Shown here one piece after another: positions 1,170 to 36,887 of a DNA stretch of 64,000 bases (its first letter is position 1; the number at the start of each line of letters is the position of its first letter). A program made the position numbers and the translations under genes. The stretch covers positions 310,001-374,000 of IMG/VR virus record IMGVR_UViG_3300017917_001342; one strand, 5' to 3'. The notes under the pieces are model-generated. The model worked only from the letters and a program-made list of their open reading frames with translations. It did not search any database and was not told the DNA's origin.

Positions 1170-1381
1170 GAGTTTTTATTTTCATATGCTTAAAACAATG
1201 AAATCGGAATGTATTTTTACATCCCGACTCACTGTATTCGTTTATAATATAATAATTTAGAGTCTGACAAATTCAACGCCTTCGGCGTGGCTTGGCAGTA
1301 ATATAATAATTTATCTTGACGGGTACTTTATATTTACTAGTCTTGATAGGTATGTAGTTAATATGTTATCATCATTGGTGT

Positions 1382-1718
1382 AGTAAAACGGCAGTTTGAT
1401 TCTGTTTCCAAGTCCAAACTGCCAAAAACTCATTTACGCTGCGAGAGCGTAAGAAGGTGCAACGTTATCGTTTGCAACTGTTGATTTTCTTGCGTTAACC
1501 GAGCTTGCGCCGGGCAACTCCACTCACATAGTCCGCCTGTCGATCCTATTTCGAGCCCATCAAGAATACACACCGTGATCTAAGGCCGGAATTCCCGCCC
1601 CTTGACGTATCGAAGTCGCTGTCCAGTTTCCCGAACTATTTCGATACATGTGTACTCTTGGTGGACCCGCTGGGTACCGCCCCCAGGTCCAGAACGTGTT
1701 CCGTTTGCTTCAACGTTA
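1382..1718 (-). ncRNA. ssrA: tmRNA, circularly permuted two-piece form: acceptor piece ~1718-1659, intervening segment 1658-1559, coding piece 1558-~1382
   Basis: Acceptor piece ends CTGGG-GGCGGTA-CCCAG-CGGGTCC-ACCA. Coding piece starts GGGCTCG-AAATAGGATCGAC. The acceptor stem GGGCTCG/CGGGTCC has G3:U70 and an A discriminator. Tag frame 1475-1434 reads ANDNVAPSYALAA*. Outer ends are approximate. Confidence 0.93.
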
Positions 1719-1723
1719 CAGTG

Positions 1724-1731
1724 TATTTATA
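1724..1731 (-). promoter_or_regulatory. T4-like late promoter (TATAAATA) driving the tmRNA precursor
   Basis: Exact TATAAATA just upstream of the acceptor piece. Confidence 0.65.
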
Positions 1732-1862
1732 GCTTCACTTTTTTGGTTTGTCAACTGGTGTTTTTTCTAACTTCTTGTCTTGCTTAGTCTGTTCTTCTAA
1801 ACATTCTGGACAAAATTCTGAACCGTATTCTGCACAATCTTTACAATGGTCTTTTTCTTTTT

Positions 1863-12005: not shown

Positions 12006-12836
12006 TTACTCACCATATTTTGGCCAATTAACGCCGCTTCTTTCCCTACTACTAGGCCCTCTAAGACGTTGGTTATCACCTATGCCGCCGCGAGTCTTAG
12101 TTGTTGTTACAGCAACAGACGGTTTAGATTGTTTGTTAATTAAATGGTCTGTTCGTATTTCTATCCAATTTGGTAATCTTCTAAGGTGGTAATCAACTGT
12201 AGAGTTTTGTACATTTAAACCTAGCATCTTAGGAATACTGCTTGAACTATATCCTTTACTATATAAATCTGCCATTTGTTGCACTTGCTCAGGTGTTGTG
12301 CCTACTGTTAAACCCTGCTGCCCATATCGTTGTTTTTTTATTTCGTTATATTTGTCAACACCAATTAATTTATATAAAAGTTTAGGCACAGTGCTAATAT
12401 CTATGCCAAATTGGTCAGCAATATCAGTTGCAGATGCACCATTTAAAAACAAATCTGTAATCTGTTTTTTATCCTCGTCGGTTAATGCGTTACCTGCCAT
12501 TAACGTTTTATGTTGACGCTCGGGGTATTTAAGTTCTAATATTCTATTGACTTTTTTAAGAGGTATGCCAAGATCTTTAGAAATTGCAGTAGGACCTTTA
12601 CCTTCATCCCACAACATTTTTACTAGCTCAATAGTATCGTCATCTATAGGCTGTTGTAATCTTACTCTGTCTGTATAATGTCGTTTTATTATATGTCGAA
12701 CTTGGCTTACACTTAATCCAAGTTCATCTGCAATTGTACTAGAGCTTTTACCACTGTCTCTTTTAGATTTTATTAGATCAATTGTTTGTTGATCATACTT
12801 TTTAGATGTTTCGACTATAAACTCACTAGCTCTCAT
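12006..12836 (-). CDS. multi-HTH DNA-binding protein (four tandem HTH units)
   Basis: Four repeats of G.S...IA..LG....V; MRASEFIVE leader. Confidence 0.75.
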   Translation of the reverse strand: MRASEFIVETSKKYDQQTIDLIKSKRDSGKSSSTIADELGLSVSQVRHIIKRHYTDRVRLQQPIDDDTIELVKMLWDEGKGPTAISKDLGIPLKKVNRILELKYPERQHKTLMAGNALTDEDKKQITDLFLNGASATDIADQFGIDISTVPKLLYKLIGVDKYNEIKKQRYGQQGLTVGTTPEQVQQMADLYSKGYSSSSIPKMLGLNVQNSTVDYHLRRLPNWIEIRTDHLINKQSKPSVAVTTTKTRGGIGDNQRLRGPSSRERSGVNWPKYGE

Positions 12837-23524: not shown

Positions 23525-23971
23525 ATGGATAACATTGAATCTATTAAATCATATAAAGACTTGATCAGTCGGTTAAATGAGGCTGAAGAAGAGCCTGCTG
23601 TTACACCACCAGCAGAAGAGCCTGCTGTTACACCCCCGCCGGAAGAAGAGCCTGCTGCTGCACCAGAAGCAGATACAGTTGACCAAGAACAAGACGACAA
23701 AGAAATTGAAGATGTAATGACATCTCCAAAGTCTGAAACTAAAAAGATATCTATTGGTACACTTGCATCTGATTTAGGTCTTGAAAATCCTGACATATTC
23801 AAATCTGCATTTAGACAACTTCGCAAAGGCGAATTACCAGACGACGAAGATGAAATGCGCGAATTGGGCGATGCATTTTTTAAAATAATGACCGCAGACG
23901 CATCTACCACACAAAGAGTAATAAATCGTCTGCGATCCATTTATCGTAAATCTTCTAAACCTAACGTCTAA
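23525..23971 (+). CDS. acidic hypothetical protein with EEPAVTPP tandem repeats
   Basis: GATAAATA promoter and GAGG RBS upstream; repeated gaagagcctgctgttaca. Confidence 0.65.
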   Translation: MDNIESIKSYKDLISRLNEAEEEPAVTPPAEEPAVTPPPEEEPAAAPEADTVDQEQDDKEIEDVMTSPKSETKKISIGTLASDLGLENPDIFKSAFRQLRKGELPDDEDEMRELGDAFFKIMTADASTTQRVINRLRSIYRKSSKPNV

Positions 23972-25397
23972 TTAAACTAGTCAACGACTGCAAATTCTGC
24001 ATGTTCTTAGCTAAATCCGATGTGGGTTTAGCCGTTGCAACCTGTCGTGCTGCTGCTGGTGTATCTGTTTGATCAGCAGTGTTTTTTCTACGCAATGCAT
24101 CAAACATATCTGCACCAGCAGCACTGGCCTGTAACTGATTTTGCTGTTCTTCGTCCAAATCAAATATACGCAGTGTATTTGGATCAAATCCTAAGAATAC
24201 TTTGCTTCCAACACCACTTGAACTACGAGTTTTTAAGAACTGTATTTGATACTGACCGCGCTCTTTCATTGCTGCACTAGCAAAGATACTGATCACGTTG
24301 TCTGCTGTTTGAACTTTACTCAAACCACCTGCAATATGACTGTGGTCATGTTCTTGTTCTTGCACTGCTGATCTGTTTAACTGAGATGCTGTGATCCCAA
24401 TCATATTGCGATCTGTACAAAGCCCTCTGAACTCTTCTGTAACAAACTTGTCTTTGATATTCAAGTTACTCGGATCAATTGCTTTGTTGTTTGGATAAAG
24501 AAGATCAAGATAATCTACTATCAACACATCGCAACGTTGTTGGGTTTCAATTTCATAGTTTTTGAGATATGCTTTGAGATCATTACAGGTGCTACCCTGT
24601 GGCAATTGTCTAACATGTAGTAAACCACTTGATCGTTGTGCTTGCTTAACTTTGAGTTCAACAGTGTCTAGATTCCTAAAGATTTCTTTACTGCCAACTT
24701 CAGTAAGCATACTGTCCATACGCATACTTGTCAGACCTTCGCTAAGTTCTAATGTGATATAAACCACGTTTAGCTTTTGCTTAGCAAGGTTTATACTCAT
24801 GTTTTGCAAGAACAGACTTTTACCAACACCAGAACCTGCTGCCCATATGGTTATCTCGCCTCGATTGATACCGCCATAGAGCTTGTCGTCAACTGATTTC
24901 CAGCCAGTGGTTACCTGTCCGTTTTTGTCTTTAATTTTCAATAGACGTTCGCGCGGATTTTCAAAGTAGTTAGTACCTATATCACTTTGCAGACTTATTA
25001 AGATTGCATCTCTAACTAGTTTTTCAACTTCGCCATAGTTACCTTTGTCGATGAGTTCAGTACTTGCCAACACTGCTTCTGCCAATGCACGATTTTTACA
25101 AAATTCTTCAATTTCTTTCAAAAACGCATCTTGGTGACCGTCTGTTATATTTTCGATAAAATCAAACTCAATACCAGTTTCTGCTTTTACCTGTATAAAC
25201 TTAGGCAATACTCGATATTCATCTGCATGTTTGAGAATATACCGCATAGCAGGTCGCAGTTTATTAACAAAATACTTTGCATTTAAAATGTTGACACAGC
25301 GAGCAAATATATCCTCACTGCTCAGCAACACGCTTATAAGCAACTTTTGTTTTTCTTCACCATATTGTATCGATTCTTGTTCTTCGCGCCTTGCCAT
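23961..25397 (-). CDS. gp41: replicative DnaB-like helicase (T4 gp41-like)
   Basis: AGSGVGKS Walker A, YITLELSE, IVDYLDL, TASQLNR, KTRSS. Confidence 0.92.
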   Translation of the reverse strand: MARREEQESIQYGEEKQKLLISVLLSSEDIFARCVNILNAKYFVNKLRPAMRYILKHADEYRVLPKFIQVKAETGIEFDFIENITDGHQDAFLKEIEEFCKNRALAEAVLASTELIDKGNYGEVEKLVRDAILISLQSDIGTNYFENPRERLLKIKDKNGQVTTGWKSVDDKLYGGINRGEITIWAAGSGVGKSLFLQNMSINLAKQKLNVVYITLELSEGLTSMRMDSMLTEVGSKEIFRNLDTVELKVKQAQRSSGLLHVRQLPQGSTCNDLKAYLKNYEIETQQRCDVLIVDYLDLLYPNNKAIDPSNLNIKDKFVTEEFRGLCTDRNMIGITASQLNRSAVQEQEHDHSHIAGGLSKVQTADNVISIFASAAMKERGQYQIQFLKTRSSSGVGSKVFLGFDPNTLRIFDLDEEQQNQLQASAAGADMFDALRRKNTADQTDTPAAARQVATAKPTSDLAKNMQNLQSLTSLIRR

Positions 25398-25398
25398 C

Positions 25399-26166
25399 TT
25401 ACTTCCTTATAATATCATCTTCGACACAGTTTTCGCCAAACTGTATTTCTACCATTCTTAATTCTTCAGTACCTTCGTTGGCTAACTGATGCCAGTCGCC
25501 TGTGTGTATCCAAAGGTGTTCGTGTTCACTAAAGACACCAGCTAATTCTACATCGCTGCTGACATTCAGGGTATATACAGTTGCTTTACCGTGTGTAACG
25601 AACCAAAACTCAGACCGCTTGTCATGCTTTTGCATGCTTAGACGTTTACCCGGTTCTACCGTTAATTCTTTTAGTTTTACACTTTTACCGTCTTGATGTA
25701 GCACTCTGTAATACCCCCATTGCCTTTCTGTTTTGGCGTTTTTCCAATCTTCTAATAACCACGAGCTAGAGTTGGCTTTGTTATTACCTCCAACTGCCCA
25801 GACAAATTTTAAATCATCGTCGATCATAGACATCCGCATCTCTGGTGTGTTAGTGCTGCCTCTATCGCCGCCGTTTGCAAAAATTATAATGTCATCTGGA
25901 TATTGCATTCTAACTTTTTTAATAGCGTCACATGCAGATCCGTCACTATCATCGAATTCAATTACATCATCTACTACTTCCAAATTAGCAATTACACTTT
26001 TACGTTCTGGCATAGACATAAAAGGACGTTCTTTTTTTCTAGTAAGCCATGCATCTGAATTAAGCCCGACTATTAATTTATCACCTAGAGATTTTGCAGC
26101 AATTAGGTACGCGATGTGGCCGCTGTGTATCGGATCAAATCCGCCTGTACACAATACAATTTTCAT
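25399..26166 (-). CDS. cytidylyltransferase-like domain fused to a mannose-6-phosphate isomerase type II cupin
   Basis: TGGFDPIHSGH (HxGH), NSDAWL..KK, FANGGDR; C-term LSMQKHDKRSEFW...WHQL. Confidence 0.85.
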   Translation of the reverse strand: MKIVLCTGGFDPIHSGHIAYLIAAKSLGDKLIVGLNSDAWLTRKKERPFMSMPERKSVIANLEVVDDVIEFDDSDGSACDAIKKVRMQYPDDIIIFANGGDRGSTNTPEMRMSMIDDDLKFVWAVGGNNKANSSSWLLEDWKNAKTERQWGYYRVLHQDGKSVKLKELTVEPGKRLSMQKHDKRSEFWFVTHGKATVYTLNVSSDVELAGVFSEHEHLWIHTGDWHQLANEGTEELRMVEIQFGENCVEDDIIRK

Positions 26167-27185
26167 GATTTGAACATCCTTCTTTTGATATTGATTTGCA
26201 ATTTATTATGTGTTCTATTGTCTATTATAGTTTGCAACGTGAAAAGTTTACCGTATTTGCAAGATGCATCTGCGGCATCTTTAACATCATCTTCCCATTC
26301 TGGAAAACTAACTGCCCAGTTCTCTTCTAATGCAACATCTATGAGACCTTGATTTTTACGCTGCCTGTCTGGCAACACAATTATTTCTTTGTCTGTGCTT
26401 TTTAGCAATGATAATTGTTGTTTGTTCAATTTGCTACCTAAAGCAGCAACACCATCTATTGCAATAGCATCTAGTGGCCCTTCGACTAATATTACATATT
26501 TTCTATTTGTTTTATGAATTACATCGCTGTTAAACAAATAGCCAAGCTGGAGATCACTGTTATAATATCTAGGAGTATCAGTTGGCGGTTTGCCTGCATA
26601 GCGTGCGGTCCACCCTACAATTTTATTTTTGTAATAAAATGGAATAATAAATCGCTTGTTGAGATCCCATTTTTCGCTTGACGACCAATAATAATCCCAA
26701 CCATTGGCAATTGCCGAGCCACGCGATGCAAGATAGTTACAGCATTGAACAAACTCGTCTGTGACGTTGTCATCTTCCATAACAACTTGAAACGGCCTTG
26801 CATTTTCTGGCAATTTAACTTCTGTAAAATCTGTTATGATTTTTACATCGCTAGTAGTTACTGCTACATCAACACCATTTATTTTGTTATGCAATAATTC
26901 TAGCTTGACTCGTTTAACATCATCATCTGACACACCAAGCCATTTTAACAGATTATCAAATTTCTTGCTGATATTTTGATTGTCATAAACAGTTTTAAAA
27001 CCACAGTTATAACAATTATATGCAACATATCCGCCTTCAGCCATAAGAAGGTTGCCGCGCATTCTATTGTCTTGATTATGGCCGCGATGATGACAACAAG
27101 GTGCATTAAACATAACCCAGCCGCGTGGACTAGATTTACGTTTTTGTGGTAGATGTTCCGCTATCAACTGATGTACGAGTGCCAT
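26163..27185 (-). CDS. gp61: DNA primase (T4 gp61-like)
   Basis: Zn-binding C..H...CYNC; TOPRIM VEGPLDA...DRQ...KDAAD. Confidence 0.9.
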   Translation of the reverse strand: MALVHQLIAEHLPQKRKSSPRGWVMFNAPCCHHRGHNQDNRMRGNLLMAEGGYVAYNCYNCGFKTVYDNQNISKKFDNLLKWLGVSDDDVKRVKLELLHNKINGVDVAVTTSDVKIITDFTEVKLPENARPFQVVMEDDNVTDEFVQCCNYLASRGSAIANGWDYYWSSSEKWDLNKRFIIPFYYKNKIVGWTARYAGKPPTDTPRYYNSDLQLGYLFNSDVIHKTNRKYVILVEGPLDAIAIDGVAALGSKLNKQQLSLLKSTDKEIIVLPDRQRKNQGLIDVALEENWAVSFPEWEDDVKDAADASCKYGKLFTLQTIIDNRTHNKLQINIKRRMFKS

Positions 27186-28149: not shown

Positions 28150-28521
28150 ATGACAGACACAAAAAAATTATTGCAGGAAAAGTTTCCATTCCTGACAATT
28201 GTTAGACATTTAAATCAAGATCACCTAGGCATTATACAAAATGCCGATCAATTATTTGTCAGCATTTATGTAATGGACAATACTTTTACCCCAGACATGA
28301 AAAGAGATTTCCTAGAATGTGGTGACACATGGTGGTGGGAAAGCAATAGACAAATACCAATCAACATGTTCGTCAAAACAAAATTTGCACAGTTTAAACC
28401 GTACCTTCGTGTATTTGCCAGTAAAGATACAGAAATTGTACAAGGTCCTATAGTTAATCTAAAAGACACAATGAACAAGCGAGTAAAGCGTAGAACTATT
28501 CAATTAGTGAGGACCAGCTGA
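28150..28521 (+). CDS. hypothetical protein
   Basis: 123 aa; WWWESNRQIPINMF motif; AGGA RBS. Confidence 0.7.
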   Translation: MTDTKKLLQEKFPFLTIVRHLNQDHLGIIQNADQLFVSIYVMDNTFTPDMKRDFLECGDTWWWESNRQIPINMFVKTKFAQFKPYLRVFASKDTEIVQGPIVNLKDTMNKRVKRRTIQLVRTS

Positions 28522-28867: not shown

Positions 28868-29338
28868 TTAATCACGCAGTCCTGTCACGTCAAGGGTAAC
28901 GGTAATAGTACCGTCATCGTTGACTTTGAGAACTTCTTGTTTAGGTTTGCCACGCTCAGCAGCATCTTCAGCTTCTTTTTCGTTGCTCCATTTTTCAAAT
29001 AGGCTGTGCCTATATGCAAACATTGTAGCTTCGCTGCGATCAAAAATACGTGCAAATGCTGTAAATTCAACTGCATCATCTTCTTTGTCTTCAGCTTCAA
29101 CCCAAACATTATAGGGTTCGGTAAACTGTTCCATAGTGTCCCAAATCTCTACAAGACGTGCTGGATCAAGCTTTGGACTGCGGAACAAATAACCTTCGCT
29201 AAGATCAGGTGACAATTGTGCAATTGGATCATACGACAAGTCGTGTCCTACGATCATTTGATTGTTTTTGTATTTGAGTTTAATATCGCGACCAAACATG
29301 TCGCCAGTGCAAATAAGTTTACATTTGGTGCGAGTCAT
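28868..29338 (-). CDS. hypothetical protein
   Basis: 156-aa ORF coupled to the DnaE-like gene. Confidence 0.65.
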   Translation of the reverse strand: MTRTKCKLICTGDMFGRDIKLKYKNNQMIVGHDLSYDPIAQLSPDLSEGYLFRSPKLDPARLVEIWDTMEQFTEPYNVWVEAEDKEDDAVEFTAFARIFDRSEATMFAYRHSLFEKWSNEKEAEDAAERGKPKQEVLKVNDDGTITVTLDVTGLRD

Positions 29339-29970
29339 ACCGACACTCCTTGTTGATGTGTACCTACTATAGCAGATTTAACAGATTGGTCAAGTAGCAA
29401 ATTTGCATGAACATACACTAGCATAGCATAACTCACAGCATGTGCTTTTTTGAACTCGTAACCTGCGTCACCTTTTGCCCAAATCTCATTGCGAATGCTG
29501 TCAAATCCATAGCGTTCACACTGTCCTTGCAAATGACGTTTACCAGGTCGTATCAATGCTAATATCATTGCCAAATGTTCTATGCTGGTGGGTTTAAGTC
29601 TAGCTGTTAGATCTCCGTAGTTTCCCAAGTGAAACAGCTTAGATACAAACACTGGATTACGAAATACTGCCCAATCAATTGGTTTGTGCATTAGTTCGAG
29701 CAGATGTGCTTCGTTTCGTACCTGTTCATACACACCAACGTTTAGAAAATCGATCTTGAAGAATCCTCGTTCTTCAGCAGATTCGTAATCTATACTGCAC
29801 AACCCACTGATCGGATCCTGTGGCACATCATGAAAATAAACACCTGTATTGTGTTTGGTAATTTTGCCATCTTTGATGATACTTGCAGGGACATAGTTTA
29901 GTTCTGCTAGTGCTGCATCTCTGTTGGCAAAATCTATATCAATGTCACCACGCCGATGAATTCTGTTCAT
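29335..29970 (-). CDS. minimal DNA polymerase III alpha (DnaE, family C)-like catalytic core
   Basis: GDIDIDF, FFKIDFL, LALIRPG and GYEFKKAHAVSY match DnaE DFDVDF, VKFDFL, ALYRPG and GYGFNKSHSAAY. Confidence 0.8.
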   Translation of the reverse strand: MNRIHRRGDIDIDFANRDAALAELNYVPASIIKDGKITKHNTGVYFHDVPQDPISGLCSIDYESAEERGFFKIDFLNVGVYEQVRNEAHLLELMHKPIDWAVFRNPVFVSKLFHLGNYGDLTARLKPTSIEHLAMILALIRPGKRHLQGQCERYGFDSIRNEIWAKGDAGYEFKKAHAVSYAMLVYVHANLLLDQSVKSAIVGTHQQGVSV

Positions 29971-30275
29971 TATGACGCCTTGTCAATTTTATTGTTTAAG
30001 GTTGTCCTAAGTTTTTCTATATCTCTAACTCTATTTCTATAGTTGTCGTCTAACCGTGCAATTGCATTTTGCATATTTGCCATCATGCGTTCAGTATTAC
30101 GCAAACGCTGTTCTAACATATTCACATAGTCCGGATCTATAATTTTAATACTTTGACCGTCTATGACAATTTCTGTATGTGCAGGCTTTGAAATTAAAGA
30201 TATTTTTTGTTGATTAGAGTCAGATTTATATTCATCGTCGTTGTCAGCACCGTACATGTCTATCATGTCGTCCAT
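29970..30275 (-). CDS. hypothetical coiled-coil protein
   Basis: Heptad-like C-terminal half. Confidence 0.6.
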   Translation of the reverse strand: MDDMIDMYGADNDDEYKSDSNQQKISLISKPAHTEIVIDGQSIKIIDPDYVNMLEQRLRNTERMMANMQNAIARLDDNYRNRVRDIEKLRTTLNNKIDKAS

Positions 30276-30985
30276 TACATACCTGCCTTTTTTAAAGTGT
30301 CTTTGACAAAATTAGCACTTTCTTTATCATTTTTGAATTTCAATGACCATTGTGCCACTGGTGCTGCTGTCATAATTATGCCAACCTGTTCTGGTGTACA
30401 GCGTGTTAGCATGTCTGCTGCACTGTCTGCATTATACAGTACCCACGGTGATATACGACCCATTTTAACCCAATTTGCAATTTGGTTGGTGTTGACTTCT
30501 CTGAAGAAGTCGTTCCAGGGTTTATCGTGTTGTTGTCCCCATTCACGCATTAAAATGATTGCACGTTCCAATGCTTGTTCGGGTGGTTCTGTTCGTATAA
30601 GTTCTTTGATGTATTGTTCGAACACAATATCATGTGTCCAATTGTCAATTGGTAAATTGTTTTTAATCACATAATCTATGAACTTAGTTGGTTCAGGTAC
30701 TGCAAGATCTAGTATATGTCTTGAAAATTTACTAAATGCAAGATAATACCTGCTATCTATAAATTCTCTATAGGTTTTCTTTTCGCCTTGTTTTTTGAGT
30801 CTTGAATTTAATTCATAAAATCTGCTCCAACCTAGAAATGCAATTCTGCCTTGAGGCTGATCTTTTTGAAACCACCGACGTTTCTTCTCACAGATATGAT
30901 TAATTAATCGCATTTCATCTGTGAACTGACGTTCACAAAATTCGCACTTATACTGCCGTGGTTTTGTTGTAGAACTTTTTGGCAT
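30275..30985 (-). CDS. hypothetical protein with an N-terminal C2H2-like zinc finger
   Basis: YKCEFCERQF...LINHIC; start probably MPKSS at 30985. Confidence 0.7.
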   Translation of the reverse strand: MPKSSTTKPRQYKCEFCERQFTDEMRLINHICEKKRRWFQKDQPQGRIAFLGWSRFYELNSRLKKQGEKKTYREFIDSRYYLAFSKFSRHILDLAVPEPTKFIDYVIKNNLPIDNWTHDIVFEQYIKELIRTEPPEQALERAIILMREWGQQHDKPWNDFFREVNTNQIANWVKMGRISPWVLYNADSAADMLTRCTPEQVGIIMTAAPVAQWSLKFKNDKESANFVKDTLKKAGM

Positions 30986-31472
30986 CTTCGACAAGCTCTT
31001 TGATTTCTGCTTTACTAAGTCCTGCATCTTCGCCTAATTTCTGTAATGTGTCTTTATTGTGTTGACTTTTTAATATGTTTAACTCTGTTTCATTGATAGT
31101 AGGATACAGTCCTATTAAAAAATCATCAATTACTTTAGACGATGTAGTTTTACTAGATGCTCCAATGTAAGGCCTATATTGCGTTTTACCAGTACCAGTT
31201 AAACACAGTAACATATGCAGCAGTTCAGGATGTTTACCTAGCTGAAACAGTAATTTGTTAACAATTTCATTGGTTATCATGACTGCATACGCAGCCGATT
31301 CATTTTGAGGACCAAGGCTGCTCATGCAACGCATTAAAACCAATGGTACATATAGTTTTTTATCGTCATCACTTAGACGATTGTAATAGTCTAAATCTTT
31401 TCGATCTATAGCAGGTAATACCACCTTTAGATCTAGTCGTTTCTTTGTTGATGTTGTTGCTTTTGTCATCAC
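30948..31472 (-). CDS. putative clamp-loader small subunit (T4 gp62-like)
   Basis: AID.K...Y.P.V..R.MS pattern, size and replication-gene context. Confidence 0.5.
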   Translation of the reverse strand: MMTKATTSTKKRLDLKVVLPAIDRKDLDYYNRLSDDDKKLYVPLVLMRCMSSLGPQNESAAYAVMITNEIVNKLLFQLGKHPELLHMLLCLTGTGKTQYRPYIGASSKTTSSKVIDDFLIGLYPTINETELNILKSQHNKDTLQKLGEDAGLSKAEIKELVEDAKKFYNKTTAV

Positions 31473-31531: not shown

Positions 31532-31900
31532 ATGGGAAGACCGCTTACATCTAAATGGATAGGTTATAAAAATGATCAGTCTCCTGTGCTGTATCCGTTG
31601 GTTAGGATAAACGGCGAAATATCTCGCGGCTATATATTGAAACAAACTGGTGCAGACAAATTCCTAGTAGAATCTGCTGTGTCTAGTATAAAAAGCATTT
31701 GTAAATTAGTAAACACTGATCAATTACACATGGATGGTCAGATGTGTTTGAGATTTACTGGTAAATCCGCAGGGTTTGTAAAAAATCTTAATGATTATAG
31801 ACTTAGAGATTTTCACGGAAATAGCCACAATTGGAGCATTTTCAATATAACAGATTTTGAAGTGTATGTGTACGACAATAGTAACCATACTGATAAATAG
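31532..31900 (+). CDS. hypothetical protein, MGRPL-family short paralog
   Basis: Shares MGRPL...I.KQ and C-terminal N/T-F.G...W features with the next gene. Confidence 0.65.
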   Translation: MGRPLTSKWIGYKNDQSPVLYPLVRINGEISRGYILKQTGADKFLVESAVSSIKSICKLVNTDQLHMDGQMCLRFTGKSAGFVKNLNDYRLRDFHGNSHNWSIFNITDFEVYVYDNSNHTDK

Positions 31901-31971: not shown

Positions 31972-33081
31972 ATGGGACGCCCGCTTAAAAAGCAATATTT
32001 TGGCAACGTCACAGCTAACGGCCAAACAATAGTTGGCAACGCCTGGGTAGCAGGCGACACTGTGGCACGACCATGCTGGATTTACAAACAGCTTTCTACA
32101 GATAGTTTCTACTGGTTCTCAGTTGACGGCACAGGTCCGGCATCTGGTGGCCAAGCATACCTTGTCAATGGTGCAATCACTGGCCCAGGACAGGCAAATA
32201 TCACACTTTATCCATATGGCGCACAAGGTGGCGGTGCAACAGGTATTGCAAACCTAGGCGTAAACGGTGGTACTGTGATTGTAAGTGGTACTGGCACTGT
32301 TGATGCAGATTATGGTGTAGGTAACGTACTGAGTGTATCTGGTGGTACATATACTGGTAACCAACAAGCCAACGTAACAGTTGCATCTGTAAAGGTACGC
32401 ACTGTTGCAGCAGCAGTAGGTGGTTCAAACTACACAGTAGGTGACACATTCACATTTAGCACTGCTGGCTTTAGCACCAATGCTGTACTAACTGTTACAG
32501 CAGCAGACGGTACAGGTGCAGTAACTGGTGTATCTATTACCAATGCAGGTGTATACACTGGCGCAACACTACCAGCTGATCCAGTATCTCCAACATCAAC
32601 AACTAAAACAAACGTATCAGCAAGTGGTGCAACTTTCAACATAGGTTGGGGTATCAACACTCTAACAGTTGCAAATGCAGGCGACTATCGTGTGTTACCA
32701 GCTAACCCTGTGTCTCTAACAGGTGGTGGCGGTGGTGCAACAGCTAACCTTACATATCAAGTAAGCAGTGTACAAGTTACTAACGGCGGTTCGGGCTTCG
32801 ATTCAGGCTTAGAAGCTGGCGTAACATTTACACCTGCAAATGGTGCGGTTGCTGTAGGTAGTGTTAACACTGCTGGTTCTGTTACAAGTGTTAGTGTAAC
32901 TACTGCTGGTTCAGGATTTACTGCGATTCCAACAGTGGCTATTGCTCCACTTGATACACCAAGTTCAGCAGCTAAGATATTCGATGGCACTGTAACTAAC
33001 TTTGCTGGTCAGAATTACAAGTGGCTAACACAGGGTAATACACTACCTGATCCAACTTGGGCACACCTAAATACTGAATAA
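31972..33081 (+). CDS. virion structural protein, MGRPL-family with inserted G/T/A beta repeats
   Basis: AAGGAG RBS, GATAAATA promoter (~31892-31899), GGSGF/AGSGF..IPTV repeats. Confidence 0.75.
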   Translation: MGRPLKKQYFGNVTANGQTIVGNAWVAGDTVARPCWIYKQLSTDSFYWFSVDGTGPASGGQAYLVNGAITGPGQANITLYPYGAQGGGATGIANLGVNGGTVIVSGTGTVDADYGVGNVLSVSGGTYTGNQQANVTVASVKVRTVAAAVGGSNYTVGDTFTFSTAGFSTNAVLTVTAADGTGAVTGVSITNAGVYTGATLPADPVSPTSTTKTNVSASGATFNIGWGINTLTVANAGDYRVLPANPVSLTGGGGGATANLTYQVSSVQVTNGGSGFDSGLEAGVTFTPANGAVAVGSVNTAGSVTSVSVTTAGSGFTAIPTVAIAPLDTPSSAAKIFDGTVTNFAGQNYKWLTQGNTLPDPTWAHLNTE

Positions 33082-33163: not shown

Positions 33164-33700
33164 TTAAACTAATTTGCGTATATCAAGACTCTCTGGTATT
33201 TTACCAATGTCTTTGAGAAAATACGCACACAACGGCTGATCACCATCACTGAGTGGCACAGCTAATAGCTGTCCATTTTTTAATTTAGGAAAATACCAGT
33301 TAACATCTGGCCATAGATTTAACACTTCTAATTTTAAAAAGTGTGGCATATAACCATTGATAGGGTTATAGCAAAACACATCGAAATCTTTATCGTTAAG
33401 GTATATCAAAGGCATTATTTCTATTTCGCCGCTGTTCTTATCTCCAATTACAACACTCCAATCCAATGGCATTTGGATATTCAAGTTGCCAATTTTTAGA
33501 TCAACACAGGGACTATTAAAACTCTCAAGAAAAATAAGAGGTATGAAATAATAGTCAACATTTGCTTGGTCAGAATAATCAAGAACGCCGAATCGTACAT
33601 CTCCGGCGTTGTCTGGTATTTGATTTAAATTAAATGTTTTGTTGTAGTTTGTAAGTATTTTCATGTGCAAATTACTTAGTAGTAAAATGCACATGAACAA
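33164..33700 (-). CDS. hypothetical protein
   Basis: 178-aa ORF downstream of uvsW; beta-rich. Confidence 0.7.
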   Translation of the reverse strand: MFMCILLLSNLHMKILTNYNKTFNLNQIPDNAGDVRFGVLDYSDQANVDYYFIPLIFLESFNSPCVDLKIGNLNIQMPLDWSVVIGDKNSGEIEIMPLIYLNDKDFDVFCYNPINGYMPHFLKLEVLNLWPDVNWYFPKLKNGQLLAVPLSDGDQPLCAYFLKDIGKIPESLDIRKLV

Positions 33701-33708
33701 AATAATTA

Positions 33709-35169
33709 TCAGCTAAATCTGTCTATTTTCTCTATAGAAAAAGGGTATTTTGCTTGATTATAAAACTGTTTTCGTTTAGTTAAATGTCTTGCACTGAATT
33801 TACAGTTACTTGTCATATCCCAGATTTGCACAAAGTCTTTGTCTTCTGCTTTACGTAACCCTCGTCCAATACTTTGAATAACACGAACAAAACTTTTACC
33901 AGGTTCGATTAGTACTAGGTTAAAGAGTCGAGGTACGTTAATACCAACAGCAGCAACGCCATAAGTAGCGATAAGCGTTTGATCATCATTAGTCGCGATG
34001 TTTTCATATTCTGCCTTTCTGTCTTTAGTCTTTACTGCACCGCTGATAAACGTACTTCCTTCTATCAATGCTTCTAGTGCTTTACCAGTTTCTAGTCTAT
34101 CGCATAACACAAGAGTGTTACCAGTTTTTGCAATAGCAGATATCATACTAGACATCCATTTGACTCGATCTTTGTCTGTCACAAGAAATTTTAATTCTTC
34201 TTGGTAGTTGTTGTACTTCATAAGTTCTTTTGTCTGTAACACATTGACATGACACTTGGCAAGTACGCCTTTTTCTTGTAGATCACTTGCAAACAAATCG
34301 CCCACGTTAGGCCCAACGCTCGACAGTAAGCACAACTGATTTTGTTCTTCTTCTGGAATGGTACCAGTCATACCCCATCTGATTGGAACATGTCTAAACA
34401 CAGTAGTCATCAAACGTGTAACAACTTCAGCTTGAAGAATGTGACACTCATCAACAATGACACATACCAGATTGTTCATAAATTCTTCAAGCTGGTTATC
34501 GTCTAGTGCTTCTTTGTGTTTCTTATCAAGTATGTTAAGACTTTGCCAAGTGCATATTGTATGCGTTTTGTTGTATTCTTTACGGTCGCCATAAAGTACA
34601 CCAACATCTAAACCTAAGTTAATGTAATCGGCTTCGGTTTGTTCAACTAGACTTTTGTTAGGTACAATAATAATACTGCGTCCAAAAGGCTCTACTAATT
34701 GACTTAGTGTAGCAGTTAGCAGTGTTTTGCCTGCACCGGTTGCAATCTGTTGAATACACTGTAGATTTTCTGCGTATCTGTTAACTAATTCTACTTGATA
34801 ATCTCGCAGTACAATTGGTTGCCCTGCACGTTCATGTTTAGCGGGCCAAACTTTTGGATGATGTGCATTTGAATCAATTGGTTTTAAATCAATGTGATAT
34901 TGCATTCGTTCGTCGACAATATCTATCTCATAACCATTTTCTTTGATTATAGGCAACATGCGATCTAATAGATTTAGATATGTGCGTCCGCCCATTGTAC
35001 AAAAGCTTTGAGTACCATCCCATCTACCTAACTTAAATGCAGCACTGTATCTTGCACTAGGTAAGAAATACTTAACTGCATTCACACATGCACGCCGTGT
35101 AGATAAGTCAAGACCGCCCATCTTGATGTTAACTTCGTCTTCTATTGTTATTATACATTCTTTAATCAT
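33709..35169 (-). CDS. uvsW: SF2 DNA helicase (UvsW-like)
   Basis: LRDYQ, ATGAGKT, IVDECH, GMTGT, QSIGRGLR. Confidence 0.93.
   Translation of the reverse strand: MIKECIITIEDEVNIKMGGLDLSTRRACVNAVKYFLPSARYSAAFKLGRWDGTQSFCTMGGRTYLNLLDRMLPIIKENGYEIDIVDERMQYHIDLKPIDSNAHHPKVWPAKHERAGQPIVLRDYQVELVNRYAENLQCIQQIATGAGKTLLTATLSQLVEPFGRSIIIVPNKSLVEQTEADYINLGLDVGVLYGDRKEYNKTHTICTWQSLNILDKKHKEALDDNQLEEFMNNLVCVIVDECHILQAEVVTRLMTTVFRHVPIRWGMTGTIPEEEQNQLCLLSSVGPNVGDLFASDLQEKGVLAKCHVNVLQTKELMKYNNYQEELKFLVTDKDRVKWMSSMISAIAKTGNTLVLCDRLETGKALEALIEGSTFISGAVKTKDRKAEYENIATNDDQTLIATYGVAAVGINVPRLFNLVLIEPGKSFVRVIQSIGRGLRKAEDKDFVQIWDMTSNCKFSARHLTKRKQFYNQAKYPFSIEKIDRFS

Positions 35170-35261: not shown

Positions 35262-36887
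<1,626 letters not shown>

What the first reader, a model, noticed from the sequence alone, without database searches (positions are those of the whole stretch)
29335..29970. A 211-aa miniature family-C polymerase core in a T4-style replisome
Seen: all three DnaE catalytic aspartate positions (DIDID and KIDFL) and the finger motifs (LIRPG, FKKAHAVSY) fit in 211 aa, against over 1000 aa for bacterial DnaE. PHP, clamp-binding and OB regions are absent. The neighbours are T4-like (gp41, gp61, gp62-like, gp32, UvsWXY), a system that normally uses a family-B polymerase. Inference: a split or minimal Pol III whose other parts may be the coupled ORFs (28868-29338, 29970-30275, 30275-30985).
Basis: partly seen in the sequence, partly recalled or inferred. 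Interest (0 to 1): 0.6.

Follow-up and report, generated by a model that had tools for sequence, protein, structure and literature searches.

The report
Half of a split mini Pol III
The 211-residue gene is real and related to the bacterial replicative polymerase DnaE, but it is only the second half of a two-gene miniature polymerase already described by computer analysis in giant phages; its other half lies 327 kb away, not next door.

Summary
ORF 29335-29970 (-) encodes 211 aa carrying the DnaE motifs DIDIDF, KIDFL, IRPG and FKKAHAVSY. These are invariant or nearly so in 52 relatives. The AlphaFold model (pLDDT 90.9) matches only family-C polymerases (Taq Pol III alpha Z 9.9; E. coli residues 394-818).

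It is not a complete core. It lacks the first half of the palm and the GS phosphate-binding motif. Those sit in a 173-aa protein at genome position 12273-12794 (-), 327 kb away. That protein passes Pfam DNA_pol3_alpha, matches E. coli residues 279-393, and ends exactly where the 211-aa protein begins.

A co-fold of the two halves scored 0.89 against 0.00 for the best control. It pairs the strand before GRGS with the DIDIDF strand.

All 84 first-half genes examined stop at the same point, and the two halves were never adjacent. The genome also has a complete 922-aa family-B polymerase and no PHP domain.

Iyer et al. 2021 (PMC7824862) already described this split minimal Pol III in group 2.2 jumbo phages, so this is a new member of a known, biochemically untested kind. 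One of them, a C2H2 zinc-finger protein, is a conserved neighbour of unknown role.

The parts
29335..29970 (-). C-terminal subunit ('C-half', 211 aa) of the split minimal Pol III alpha. It holds the second half of the palm (metal ligands D9/D11, D74, K72), has no thumb, and carries a shortened fingers domain (RPG, FKKAH..Y). It has a 16-aa C-terminal tail that its closest relatives lack.
   Evidence: The tail arises because a sense codon stands where relatives have a stop. Contigs from independent freshwater studies show no indels. Of the listed natural substitutions, 4 of 5 and 13 of 14 are synonymous.
30275..31027 (-). Conserved upstream neighbour (250 aa; the real start is probably M15 at 30985). 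It has an N-terminal C2H2 zinc finger followed by a roughly 200-aa phage-specific region. It is a possible accessory factor; its role is unknown.
   Evidence: It is present on the same strand just upstream of the C-half in 80 of 82 related loci, often abutting it. It matches PHROG 11058, unknown function, at E 1e-64. The zinc finger is seen. The Atlas finds only phage hypothetical proteins.
30948..31472 (-). Conserved neighbour (174 aa) upstream of the zinc-finger protein; function unknown.
   Evidence: Found in 71 of 82 loci. Matches PHROG 11758, unknown function, at E 2e-28.
29970..30275 (-). Coupled 101-aa ORF, probably coiled-coil, between the zinc-finger gene and the C-half. It is clade-specific and not a core part.
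   Evidence: Found in only 19 of 82 loci. It gives a weak match to PHROG 14909 'virion structural protein' at E 2e-6. Its Pfam hints are all sub-threshold and are mostly to coiled-coil or helical families.
28868..29338 (-). Coupled downstream 156-aa ORF (ATGA overlap with the C-half stop). It is clade-specific and has no family match.
   Evidence: Found in only 21 of 82 loci, all in the close clade. No Pfam or PHROG hit. It is not fused to the C-half in relatives: an in-frame stop separates them.
28150..28521 (+). Conserved antisense neighbour (123 aa) downstream of the C-half; function unknown.
   Evidence: Found in 76 of 82 loci, always on the opposite strand. Matches PHROG 11637 at E 3e-33. 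The same arrangement occurs in phages Phosso and Paride.
26163..27185 (-). DnaG/gp61-type primase, part of the conserved cluster.
   Evidence: PHROG 47 at E 1e-29. Found in 49 of 82 loci within the flank.
23961..25397 (-). DnaB/gp41-like replicative helicase.
   Evidence: PHROG 19 at E 1e-69.
33709..35169 (-). UvsW-like helicase at the upstream end of the conserved cluster. The adjacent 178-aa ORF at 33164-33700 (-) is also conserved.
   Evidence: PHROG 16 at E 6e-71, and PHROG 11279 for the 178-aa ORF. They occur in 40 and 49 of 82 loci.

Best explanation
ORF 29335-29970 encodes the C-terminal subunit of a two-gene, non-covalently assembled miniature relative of bacterial DNA polymerase III alpha. 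This is the 'split minimal Pol III' of group 2.2 (RaK2, PA5oct and Atu_ph07-like) jumbo phages. This subunit supplies the strand with the two metal-binding aspartates (D9 and D11, equivalent to E. coli D401 and D403). It also supplies the strand with the third aspartate and lysine (K72 and D74, equivalent to K553 and D555) and a shortened fingers domain. A separate 173-aa subunit, encoded 327 kb away at genome position 12273-12794 (-), supplies the first half of the palm (E. coli 279-393). That half carries the WGVGRGSS phosphate-binding motif and a 78-aa phage-specific N-terminal domain. The two chains break at the loop between E. coli residues 392/393 and 394. They are predicted to rebuild one Pol-beta-like palm by beta-sheet complementation, so the active site is composite and neither protein should work alone. 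The enzyme has no PHP domain, thumb, clamp-binding region or OB domain. It coexists with a complete T4-type family-B replicase. It is therefore most likely an auxiliary, poorly processive DNA polymerase used in repair, recombination-dependent synthesis or primer extension, not the main replicase. What is shown: homology, fold, the exact complementarity of the two genes, their co-occurrence, purifying selection, and a strongly scored co-fold. What is inferred: that the proteins really bind, that the pair polymerises DNA, and its role in the cell.
For: Identity of the C-half. Partner: Pfam DNA_pol3_alpha at 37 bits, above the 23.9-bit cut-off. Its profile aligns to E. coli alpha 321-392 and Taq 409-454. 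Its model (pLDDT 89.1) matches M. tuberculosis DnaE1 308-413 at Z 10.7 and E. coli 279-393 at Z 8.8-9.0, with the next unrelated hit at Z 3.0. The C-half alignment starts at E. coli 394 and Taq 456, so the two pieces abut without gap or overlap. Co-fold: ipSAE 0.89 in all three runs against a best control of 0.00; runs agree in at least 96% of contacts; partner pLDDT is 87-88. That mark was reached by 58 of 80 solved complexes and 2 of 110 mismatched pairs. The closest contacts are partner residues 138-140 with C-half residues 12-14. Conservation of the split: all 84 N-half ORFs end 31 to 37 residues after the G of GRGS, nearly all at 33, and at the same alignment point. No C-half locus (82, with 4-kb flanks) holds an N-half. 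Co-occurrence: 96 and 92 phage records with the same host genera; both halves are present in complete genomes G006 and G008 and in G002 and G003. Selection: 17 of 19 listed natural substitutions are synonymous. Genome setting: a family-B polymerase is present and PHP is absent. Prior description of the same system: Iyer et al. 2021, PMC7824862, section 3.4.1.
Against: There is no biochemical evidence for binding or for polymerase activity, here or in any paper I found. The co-fold may score high because the model has learned single-chain DnaE structures, and the two alignments were not paired by genome. About 115 residues separate RPG from FNKSH in E. coli but only about 30 here, so finger residues that contact the incoming nucleotide in DnaE may be missing. 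I did not test this. I could not measure whether the three aspartates sit together in 3D, because the tools give no coordinates. Their equivalence rests on sequence-profile alignment and on matched structural ranges. No RNA data were available, so expression is untested.
Confidence: 0.8

Rival explanations
1. One reading: the 211-aa protein is a self-contained minimal polymerase core, or it is completed by the translationally coupled neighbours (28868-29338, 29970-30275, 30275-31027).
For: All three acidic residues and the finger motifs are in this chain. The four genes are tightly coupled by 1- to 4-nt overlaps. The zinc-finger gene is a near-universal upstream neighbour.
Against: The chain starts at E. 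coli residue 394 and lacks the GS motif and the first palm strands. A perfectly complementary partner exists elsewhere in the genome and co-occurs across the family. Two of the three neighbours are absent from about three quarters of related loci. None of the neighbours shows any likeness to DnaE.
Confidence: 0.04
2. The two-piece palm is active but is not a templated DNA polymerase. It could instead add untemplated nucleotides, extend or modify RNA primers only, or make a nucleotide signal or counter-defence product.
For: The thumb and most duplex-gripping parts of DnaE are missing, and the fingers are much shortened. The Pol-beta-like fold is shared with many non-polymerase nucleotidyltransferases; this is established knowledge, not tested here. 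The phage already has a full replicase.
Against: The motifs that are retained and invariant are the DnaE finger motifs (RPG, FKKSH..Y), which are specific to family-C polymerases rather than to other Pol-beta-fold enzymes. The gene is embedded in a helicase-primase-UvsW cluster, and its partner lies near the clamp loader.
Confidence: 0.13
3. It is a catalytically inert remnant or decoy, for example a structural piece of the phage replisome or a binder of host replisome parts.
For: There is no activity data, and large parts of the ancestral enzyme have been lost.
Against: Every metal-binding and phosphate-binding residue is invariant across 52 and 56 diverged sequences at 45-55% mean column identity. 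Natural variation is almost entirely synonymous. Dead enzymes usually lose such residues.
Confidence: 0.03

Closest known systems
Split minimal DNA polymerase III alpha of group 2.2 jumbo phages (Iyer, Anantharaman, Krishnan, Burroughs & Aravind 2021, Viruses 13:63, PMC7824862). Its C-terminal unit is PHROG 11778, found for example in Sinorhizobium phage Phosso, Pseudomonas phage PA5oct/Paride, Agrobacterium phage Atu_ph07, RaK2, 121Q, GAP32 and CBB.
   Same: The architecture is the same: a C-terminal Mg2+ and template-binding unit and a separate N-terminal NTP-binding unit encoded by distant genes. A T4-type family-B polymerase is also present, and no other Pol III domains occur. Identity to isolate homologues is 38-50%. 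The local gene order is shared.
   Different: This copy comes from an uncultivated 518.6-kb freshwater phage. The two genes are 327 kb apart, against about 34 kb in RaK2-like phages and 182 kb in Atu_ph07. The C-half has a 16-aa tail and two extra clade-specific coupled ORFs. Details added here that I did not find in the text of that paper I read (its figures are not held): the exact and invariant break point, the co-fold, the 78-aa extra domain on the N-half, and the two conserved neighbourhoods.
Bacterial DnaE (Pol III alpha), e.g. E. coli 2hnh, Taq 3e0d, M. tuberculosis 5lew
   Same: It shares the Pol-beta-like palm with GS, DxD and K-x-D motifs, and the finger motifs RPG and FNKSH..Y. The structural matches have Z 9-11 for both halves.
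   Different: The two chains together have 384 aa against about 1,160. There is no PHP, thumb, distal fingers, clamp-binding domain, OB fold or tau-binding tail. The palm is cut into two polypeptides. Sequence identity over aligned residues is only 16-26%.
Cyanobacterial split dnaE (dnaE-n and dnaE-c joined by a split intein). This comparison is recalled from Wu, Hu & Liu 1998 and was not checked here.
   Same: A family-C polymerase is encoded by two distant genes.
   Different: There is no room for an intein here. The N-half ends at the DnaE-homologous EFLK, and only 8 residues precede the DxD strand in the C-half. Assembly must therefore be non-covalent. The break also lies inside the palm rather than later in the protein.
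Gram-positive PolC (9qrn, 9qpc)
   Same: Both halves also align to the PolC palm and fingers (Z 7.1 and 10.5).
   Different: For the C-half, identity is lower (14-15% against 16-22% for DnaE chains). PolC carries an inserted proofreading exonuclease and other domains that are absent here.

Membership tests
Split minimal Pol III alpha of group 2.2 jumbo phages (Iyer et al. 2021) | A C-terminal unit carrying the Mg2+-binding and template-binding (fingers) parts, about 190-210 aa | tested here: met
   PHROG 11778 at E 6e-60 over the full length; invariant D9, D11, D74, RPG and FKKSH; fold match to E. coli alpha 394-818.
Split minimal Pol III alpha of group 2.2 jumbo phages (Iyer et al. 2021) | A separate N-terminal NTP-binding unit encoded by a distant gene in the same genome | tested here: met
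   G000:C1:12273-12794 (-), 173 aa, 327 kb away. Pfam DNA_pol3_alpha at 37 bits, above the cut-off. Fold match to E. coli 279-393.
Split minimal Pol III alpha of group 2.2 jumbo phages (Iyer et al. 2021) | Accompanied by a T4-type family-B polymerase and a T4-like replisome, with no other Pol III domains | tested here: met
   A 922-aa family-B polymerase with exonuclease and polymerase domains. No PHP at E <= 10. DnaB, primase, UvsW, UvsX and gp32 homologues in the window.
Split minimal Pol III alpha of group 2.2 jumbo phages (Iyer et al. 2021) | The two units assemble into one active enzyme | tested here: inconclusive
   The co-fold supports binding (0.89 against a best control of 0.00; the mark was reached by 58 of 80 solved and 2 of 110 mismatched pairs). 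This is a model and may reflect memory of single-chain DnaE. Activity cannot be tested with these tools.
Family-C DNA polymerase catalytic subunit (DnaE/PolC) | A Pol-beta-like palm with a GS motif, two aspartates on one strand and a third on a neighbouring strand | tested here: met
   This is met only by the two proteins together: GRGS is on the N-half, and the aspartates are on the C-half.
Family-C DNA polymerase catalytic subunit (DnaE/PolC) | Fingers domain with the RPG and FNKSH..Y motifs | tested here: met
   R141-P142 and F173, H177, Y181 are invariant and align to E. coli 639-640 and 756-764. The fingers are shortened, about 30 aa between the motifs against about 115.
Family-C DNA polymerase catalytic subunit (DnaE/PolC) | An N-terminal PHP domain | tested here: not met
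   There is no PHP match in the whole genome at E <= 10, while the control rang in 14 of 14 reference genomes. The N-half has an unrelated 78-aa N-terminal domain instead.
Family-C DNA polymerase catalytic subunit (DnaE/PolC) | A thumb domain, clamp-binding domain and OB fold on a single polypeptide of over 1,000 aa | tested here: not met
   The two chains have 173 and 211 aa. Sixty residues separate the DxD and K-x-D strands, against about 150 in E. coli, which leaves no room for a thumb. The chain ends at about E. coli residue 818.

The most novel reading that the evidence does not exclude
The pair is a genuine second DNA polymerase of the phage replisome, built from modules supplied in trans. 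In this reading the two palm halves are joined by the near-universally adjacent C2H2 zinc-finger protein (30275-31027), and perhaps by the T4-type clamp, which replace the missing thumb and clamp-binding domains. It would act on primers made by the neighbouring primase. Such an enzyme would be the smallest known family-C polymerase and a working picture of how the bacterial replicase could have been assembled from separate parts.
Probability: 0.15. Interest if true: 0.75.

Novelty: new member of a known kind. Interest (0 to 1): 0.4.

Why it matters
Family-C polymerases are the bacterial replicases. They are large, multi-domain and unrelated to the replicases of archaea, eukaryotes and T4. A 384-residue, two-chain version that keeps every catalytic motif would define the minimal working unit of this enzyme class. 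It bears on how the class arose: either as an ancestral modular state, as Iyer et al. propose, or by reduction of a captured host gene. It would also show that giant T4-like phages run two unrelated polymerase types side by side. The system is widespread, with at least 318 and 580 relatives of the two halves in IMG/VR and about 95 isolate genomes, including culturable PA5oct, RaK2, 121Q and Atu_ph07. I found no experimental work on it, so it can be tested directly. For this window in particular, the value lies in correct annotation. The gene is usually labelled 'hypothetical' or plain 'DNA polymerase', and Pfam does not detect it.

Tried and rejected
(1) An apparent 364-aa fusion of the C-half with the downstream 156-aa ORF appeared in several relatives. 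It was an artefact of my ORF script, because tblastn aligned through a stop. Direct translation shows an in-frame stop between the two genes.

(2) Record G007 (543 kb) has the N-half but no C-half by protein, profile or PHROG search, with G006 as a positive control. It also lacks the zinc-finger neighbour and the DnaB-like helicase. The linear record most likely misses the whole cluster, so I do not count it as a true solo N-half.

(3) Pfam on the C-half alone gives only a sub-threshold finger hit, and phmmer against the PDB gives E 0.025. Profiles and structure were needed.

(4) Function of the zinc-finger neighbour: Pfam, PHROG, the ESM Atlas and a PDB profile search gave nothing beyond the finger.

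(5) Split intein hypothesis: rejected on length, since there is no spare sequence at either junction.

(6) Expression: no RNA run holds the locus, so this is untested.

(7) Literature on experiments: four searches found only the 2021 computational description and genome papers that annotate a 'Pol III alpha' fragment.

(8) Not used: the search for homologous proteins and the search of protein representatives. They are costly, and the family scans had already settled identity. The statement 'never fused' therefore rests only on 82 and 84 IMG/VR loci and the isolate records.

No alternative genetic code was used.

Full report
**Observation.** The ORF at 29335-29970 on the minus strand is open, starts at an ATG and encodes 211 aa. 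Its start overlaps the stop of the 101-aa ORF upstream by one base. Its stop overlaps the start of the 156-aa ORF downstream in an ATGA.

**What the protein is.** Pfam alone barely sees it (DNA_pol3_finger, E 0.041, below the cut-off). PHROG 11778, 'DNA polymerase', matches over its full length at E 6e-60. tblastn finds it in 96 phage records, all jumbo phages at 38-50% identity. These include Phosso, PA5oct and its kin, Atu_ph07, and the RaK2/121Q/GAP32/CBB group. IMG/VR holds at least 318 relatives.

In a 52-sequence alignment (A1), D9, D11, D13, K72, D74, R141, P142, K144, Y171, F173, H177 and Y181 are invariant. A profile of A1 matches DnaE chains in four colinear segments. These place D9/D11/D13 on E. 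coli D401/D403/D405, K72/D74 on K553/D555, RPG on 639-641, and FKKSH on 756-760.

The AlphaFold model is confident (pLDDT 90.9, pTM 0.82). Foldseek's top 14 PDB hits are all Pol III alpha or PolC. VIA-align gives Taq 3e0d at Z 9.9 (rmsd 4.6, 203 aligned, Taq 456-886) and E. coli 2hnh at Z 9.4 (residues 394-818). The first unrelated hit has Z 3.1.

The protein is therefore a true family-C relative. It spans the second half of the palm and a shortened fingers domain. Sixty residues lie between the two acidic strands, against about 150 in E. coli, so the thumb is gone. The chain ends before the clamp-binding and OB regions.

**It is only half an enzyme.** The structural match begins at E. coli residue 394. 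The first palm strands and the GS phosphate-binding motif of the Pol-beta-like fold are therefore missing.

A search of the whole genome found one hit to Pfam DNA_pol3_alpha. The window is C1:310001-374000 of a 518,643-bp IMG/VR virus record with direct terminal repeats. The hit lies at C1:12276-12497 (-), at 37 bits against a cut-off of 23.9. The ORF there is C1:12273-12794 (-) and encodes 173 aa. It carries W-G-V-G-R-G-S-S and ends in ...EFLK.

Its 56-sequence profile (A3) aligns to E. coli alpha 321-392 and Taq 409-454. Its model (pLDDT 89.1) matches M. tuberculosis DnaE1 308-413 at Z 10.7 and E. coli 279-393 at Z 8.8-9.0, with the next unrelated hit at Z 3.0. Only residues 79-173 take part in that match. 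The first 78 residues are a phage-specific domain that I could not characterise.

The first gene product ends at E. coli 392/393 and the second begins at 394. The two are exact complements. The break lies in the loop between the helix after GS and the DxD strand. There is no spare sequence for an intein.

**Do the halves fit?** A co-fold of A3 and A1 scored ipSAE 0.89 in each of three runs, against 0.00 for the best of three controls. The runs agree in at least 96% of contacts, and the partner pLDDT is 87-88. That mark was reached by 58 of 80 solved complexes and 2 of 110 mismatched pairs. The tightest contacts pair N-half residues 138-140, the strand just before GRGS, with C-half residues 12-14 of the DIDIDF strand. 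This is the beta-sheet complementation expected if one palm is rebuilt. The result supports binding but does not show it. The model may be recalling single-chain DnaE, and the alignments were not paired by genome.

**Conservation of the arrangement.** All 84 N-half ORFs examined stop at the same alignment point, nearly all 33 residues after the G of GRGS. None of the 82 C-half loci, with 4-kb flanks, contains an N-half. In isolates the two genes lie about 34 kb apart in RaK2-like phages and 182 kb apart in Atu_ph07. Here they are 327 kb apart.

The N-half occurs in 92 phage records with the same host genera as the C-half's 96, and in at least 580 IMG/VR loci. Both halves are present in the complete genomes G006 and G008 and in the partial records G002 and G003.

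One 543-kb record has the N-half but no C-half. It also lacks the zinc-finger neighbour and the DnaB-like helicase, so the whole cluster is probably missing from that linear record.

The locus recurs in independent freshwater metagenomes without indels. Of 19 listed substitutions in the gene, 17 are synonymous. The gene is under purifying selection.

Across 82 loci the conserved order is as follows:

- UvsW-like helicase
- a 178-aa ORF
- a 174-aa ORF (71 of 82 loci)
- a 250-aa C2H2 zinc-finger protein (80 of 82, same strand, often abutting)
- the C-half
- an antisense 123-aa ORF (76 of 82)
- a virion-type ORF
- primase, then DnaB-like helicase

The 101-aa and 156-aa ORFs that are coupled to the C-half in this window occur in only 19 and 21 loci, all in the nearest clade. 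They are not core parts. The zinc-finger protein is the only candidate accessory factor. No tool gave it a function beyond the finger.

The N-half has its own conserved setting: a 121-aa ORF (74 of 83 loci), a GroES-like gene (76 of 83) and, further on, a gp44-like clamp loader (40 of 83 within the flank). A Dda-like helicase sits upstream only here and in the nearest relative.

**Genome level.** The phage has a complete 922-aa family-B polymerase with exonuclease and polymerase domains. It has no PHP domain and one DnaQ/RNase T-like exonuclease. The miniature enzyme is therefore an addition to the T4-type replicase, not a replacement for it.

**Literature.** Iyer et al. 2021 (PMC7824862, sections 3.4.1 and 3.5) describe exactly this system. 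They report a phage-specific minimal Pol III alpha in group 2.2 jumbo phages. It is split into an N-terminal NTP-binding protein and a C-terminal Mg2+ and template-binding protein, encoded by distant genes alongside a family-B polymerase. They suggest it may act on one strand or in repair, and that it pictures an ancestral state. Attai et al. 2018 had already annotated a 'Pol III alpha' fragment and an 'epsilon' in Atu_ph07. I found no experimental study.

**Mechanism and rivals.** The best-supported reading is an obligate heterodimer with a composite active site. It would act as an auxiliary DNA polymerase of low intrinsic processivity. I put identity at about 0.95, real association at about 0.8, and templated DNA synthesis at about 0.6-0.65. 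The rivals are:

- a self-sufficient core, or one completed by the neighbours (0.04)
- an active but non-polymerase nucleotidyltransferase (0.13)
- an inert remnant (0.03)

The shortened stretch between RPG and FKKSH is the main reason for caution about normal polymerase chemistry.

**Verdict.** It is a new member of a kind that is known from computational work but has not been tested biochemically. The system is striking and untested, but it is published and this copy adds only detail, so I score interest as moderate at 0.4.

Noticed in passing
window 1343-1758 (-): The phage encodes a permuted, alphaproteobacterial-type tmRNA. ARAGORN reports tmRNA* with tag ANDNVAPSYALAA. Rfam matches alpha_tmRNA RF01849 at 97.2 bits (E 3e-25) and tmRNA_permuted RF04321 at 101.2 bits. 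Together with the closest isolates being Sinorhizobium and Agrobacterium phages, this hints at an alphaproteobacterial host.
   Followed up: partly
G000:C1:12273-12794 (-), outside the window; residues 1-78 of the 173-aa N-half: The N-terminal 78 residues of the partner subunit match nothing in DnaE or PolC, where only residues 79-173 align. In the co-fold they touch the C-half at residues 46-60. This is a phage-specific domain of unknown role, placed where the PHP domain would join the palm.
   Followed up: partly
window 29335-29385 (-), C-terminal 16 aa of the C-half: The closest relatives have a stop after ...LLEQS and then 12 codons before the next gene. This genome has a sense codon there and reads on to an ATGA overlap with the next ORF. 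Contigs from independent studies show no indels, so this is not an assembly error.
   Followed up: yes
window 35262-36884 (-) and G000:C1:11542-11874 (-): The phage carries a GroEL-like chaperonin (PHROG 5725, E 2e-173). It also has a GroES-like gene that is a conserved neighbour of the N-half (76 of 83 loci).
   Followed up: no
G000:C1:107656-108498 (+) (L169:1438-2280): This is a 280-aa DnaQ/RNase T-family exonuclease (Pfam E 1e-13). It is a possible proofreader in trans for the miniature polymerase, as suggested for Atu_ph07 gp671 by Attai et al. 2018. No link was tested.
   Followed up: no
window 25399-26166 (-): A 255-aa ORF sits between the DnaB-like helicase and the primase. It has a GGFDPIHSGH-type nucleotidyltransferase motif at its N-terminus, read from the sequence. 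I made no family search for it.
   Followed up: no
window 31532-31900 (+) and 31972-33081 (+): Two adjacent ORFs both begin MGRPL. The second (369 aa) is rich in Gly, Thr, Ala and Val. Both are conserved only in the closest clade (20 of 82 loci). They interrupt the otherwise minus-strand replication cluster.
   Followed up: no
L099:2575-3495 (+) (IMG/VR contig 3300025534_000213): One N-half relative is called as a 307-aa ORF, about 134 residues longer at the N-terminus than the usual 170-185 aa. This may be an added domain or a wrong start.
   Followed up: no
G007 (543,035-bp IMG/VR record reached through L093): This record is rated 100% complete but linear. It has the N-half yet lacks the C-half, the zinc-finger neighbour and the DnaB-like helicase. 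Either the completeness estimate is wrong for this giant phage, or a whole replication cluster has been lost or replaced.
   Followed up: partly
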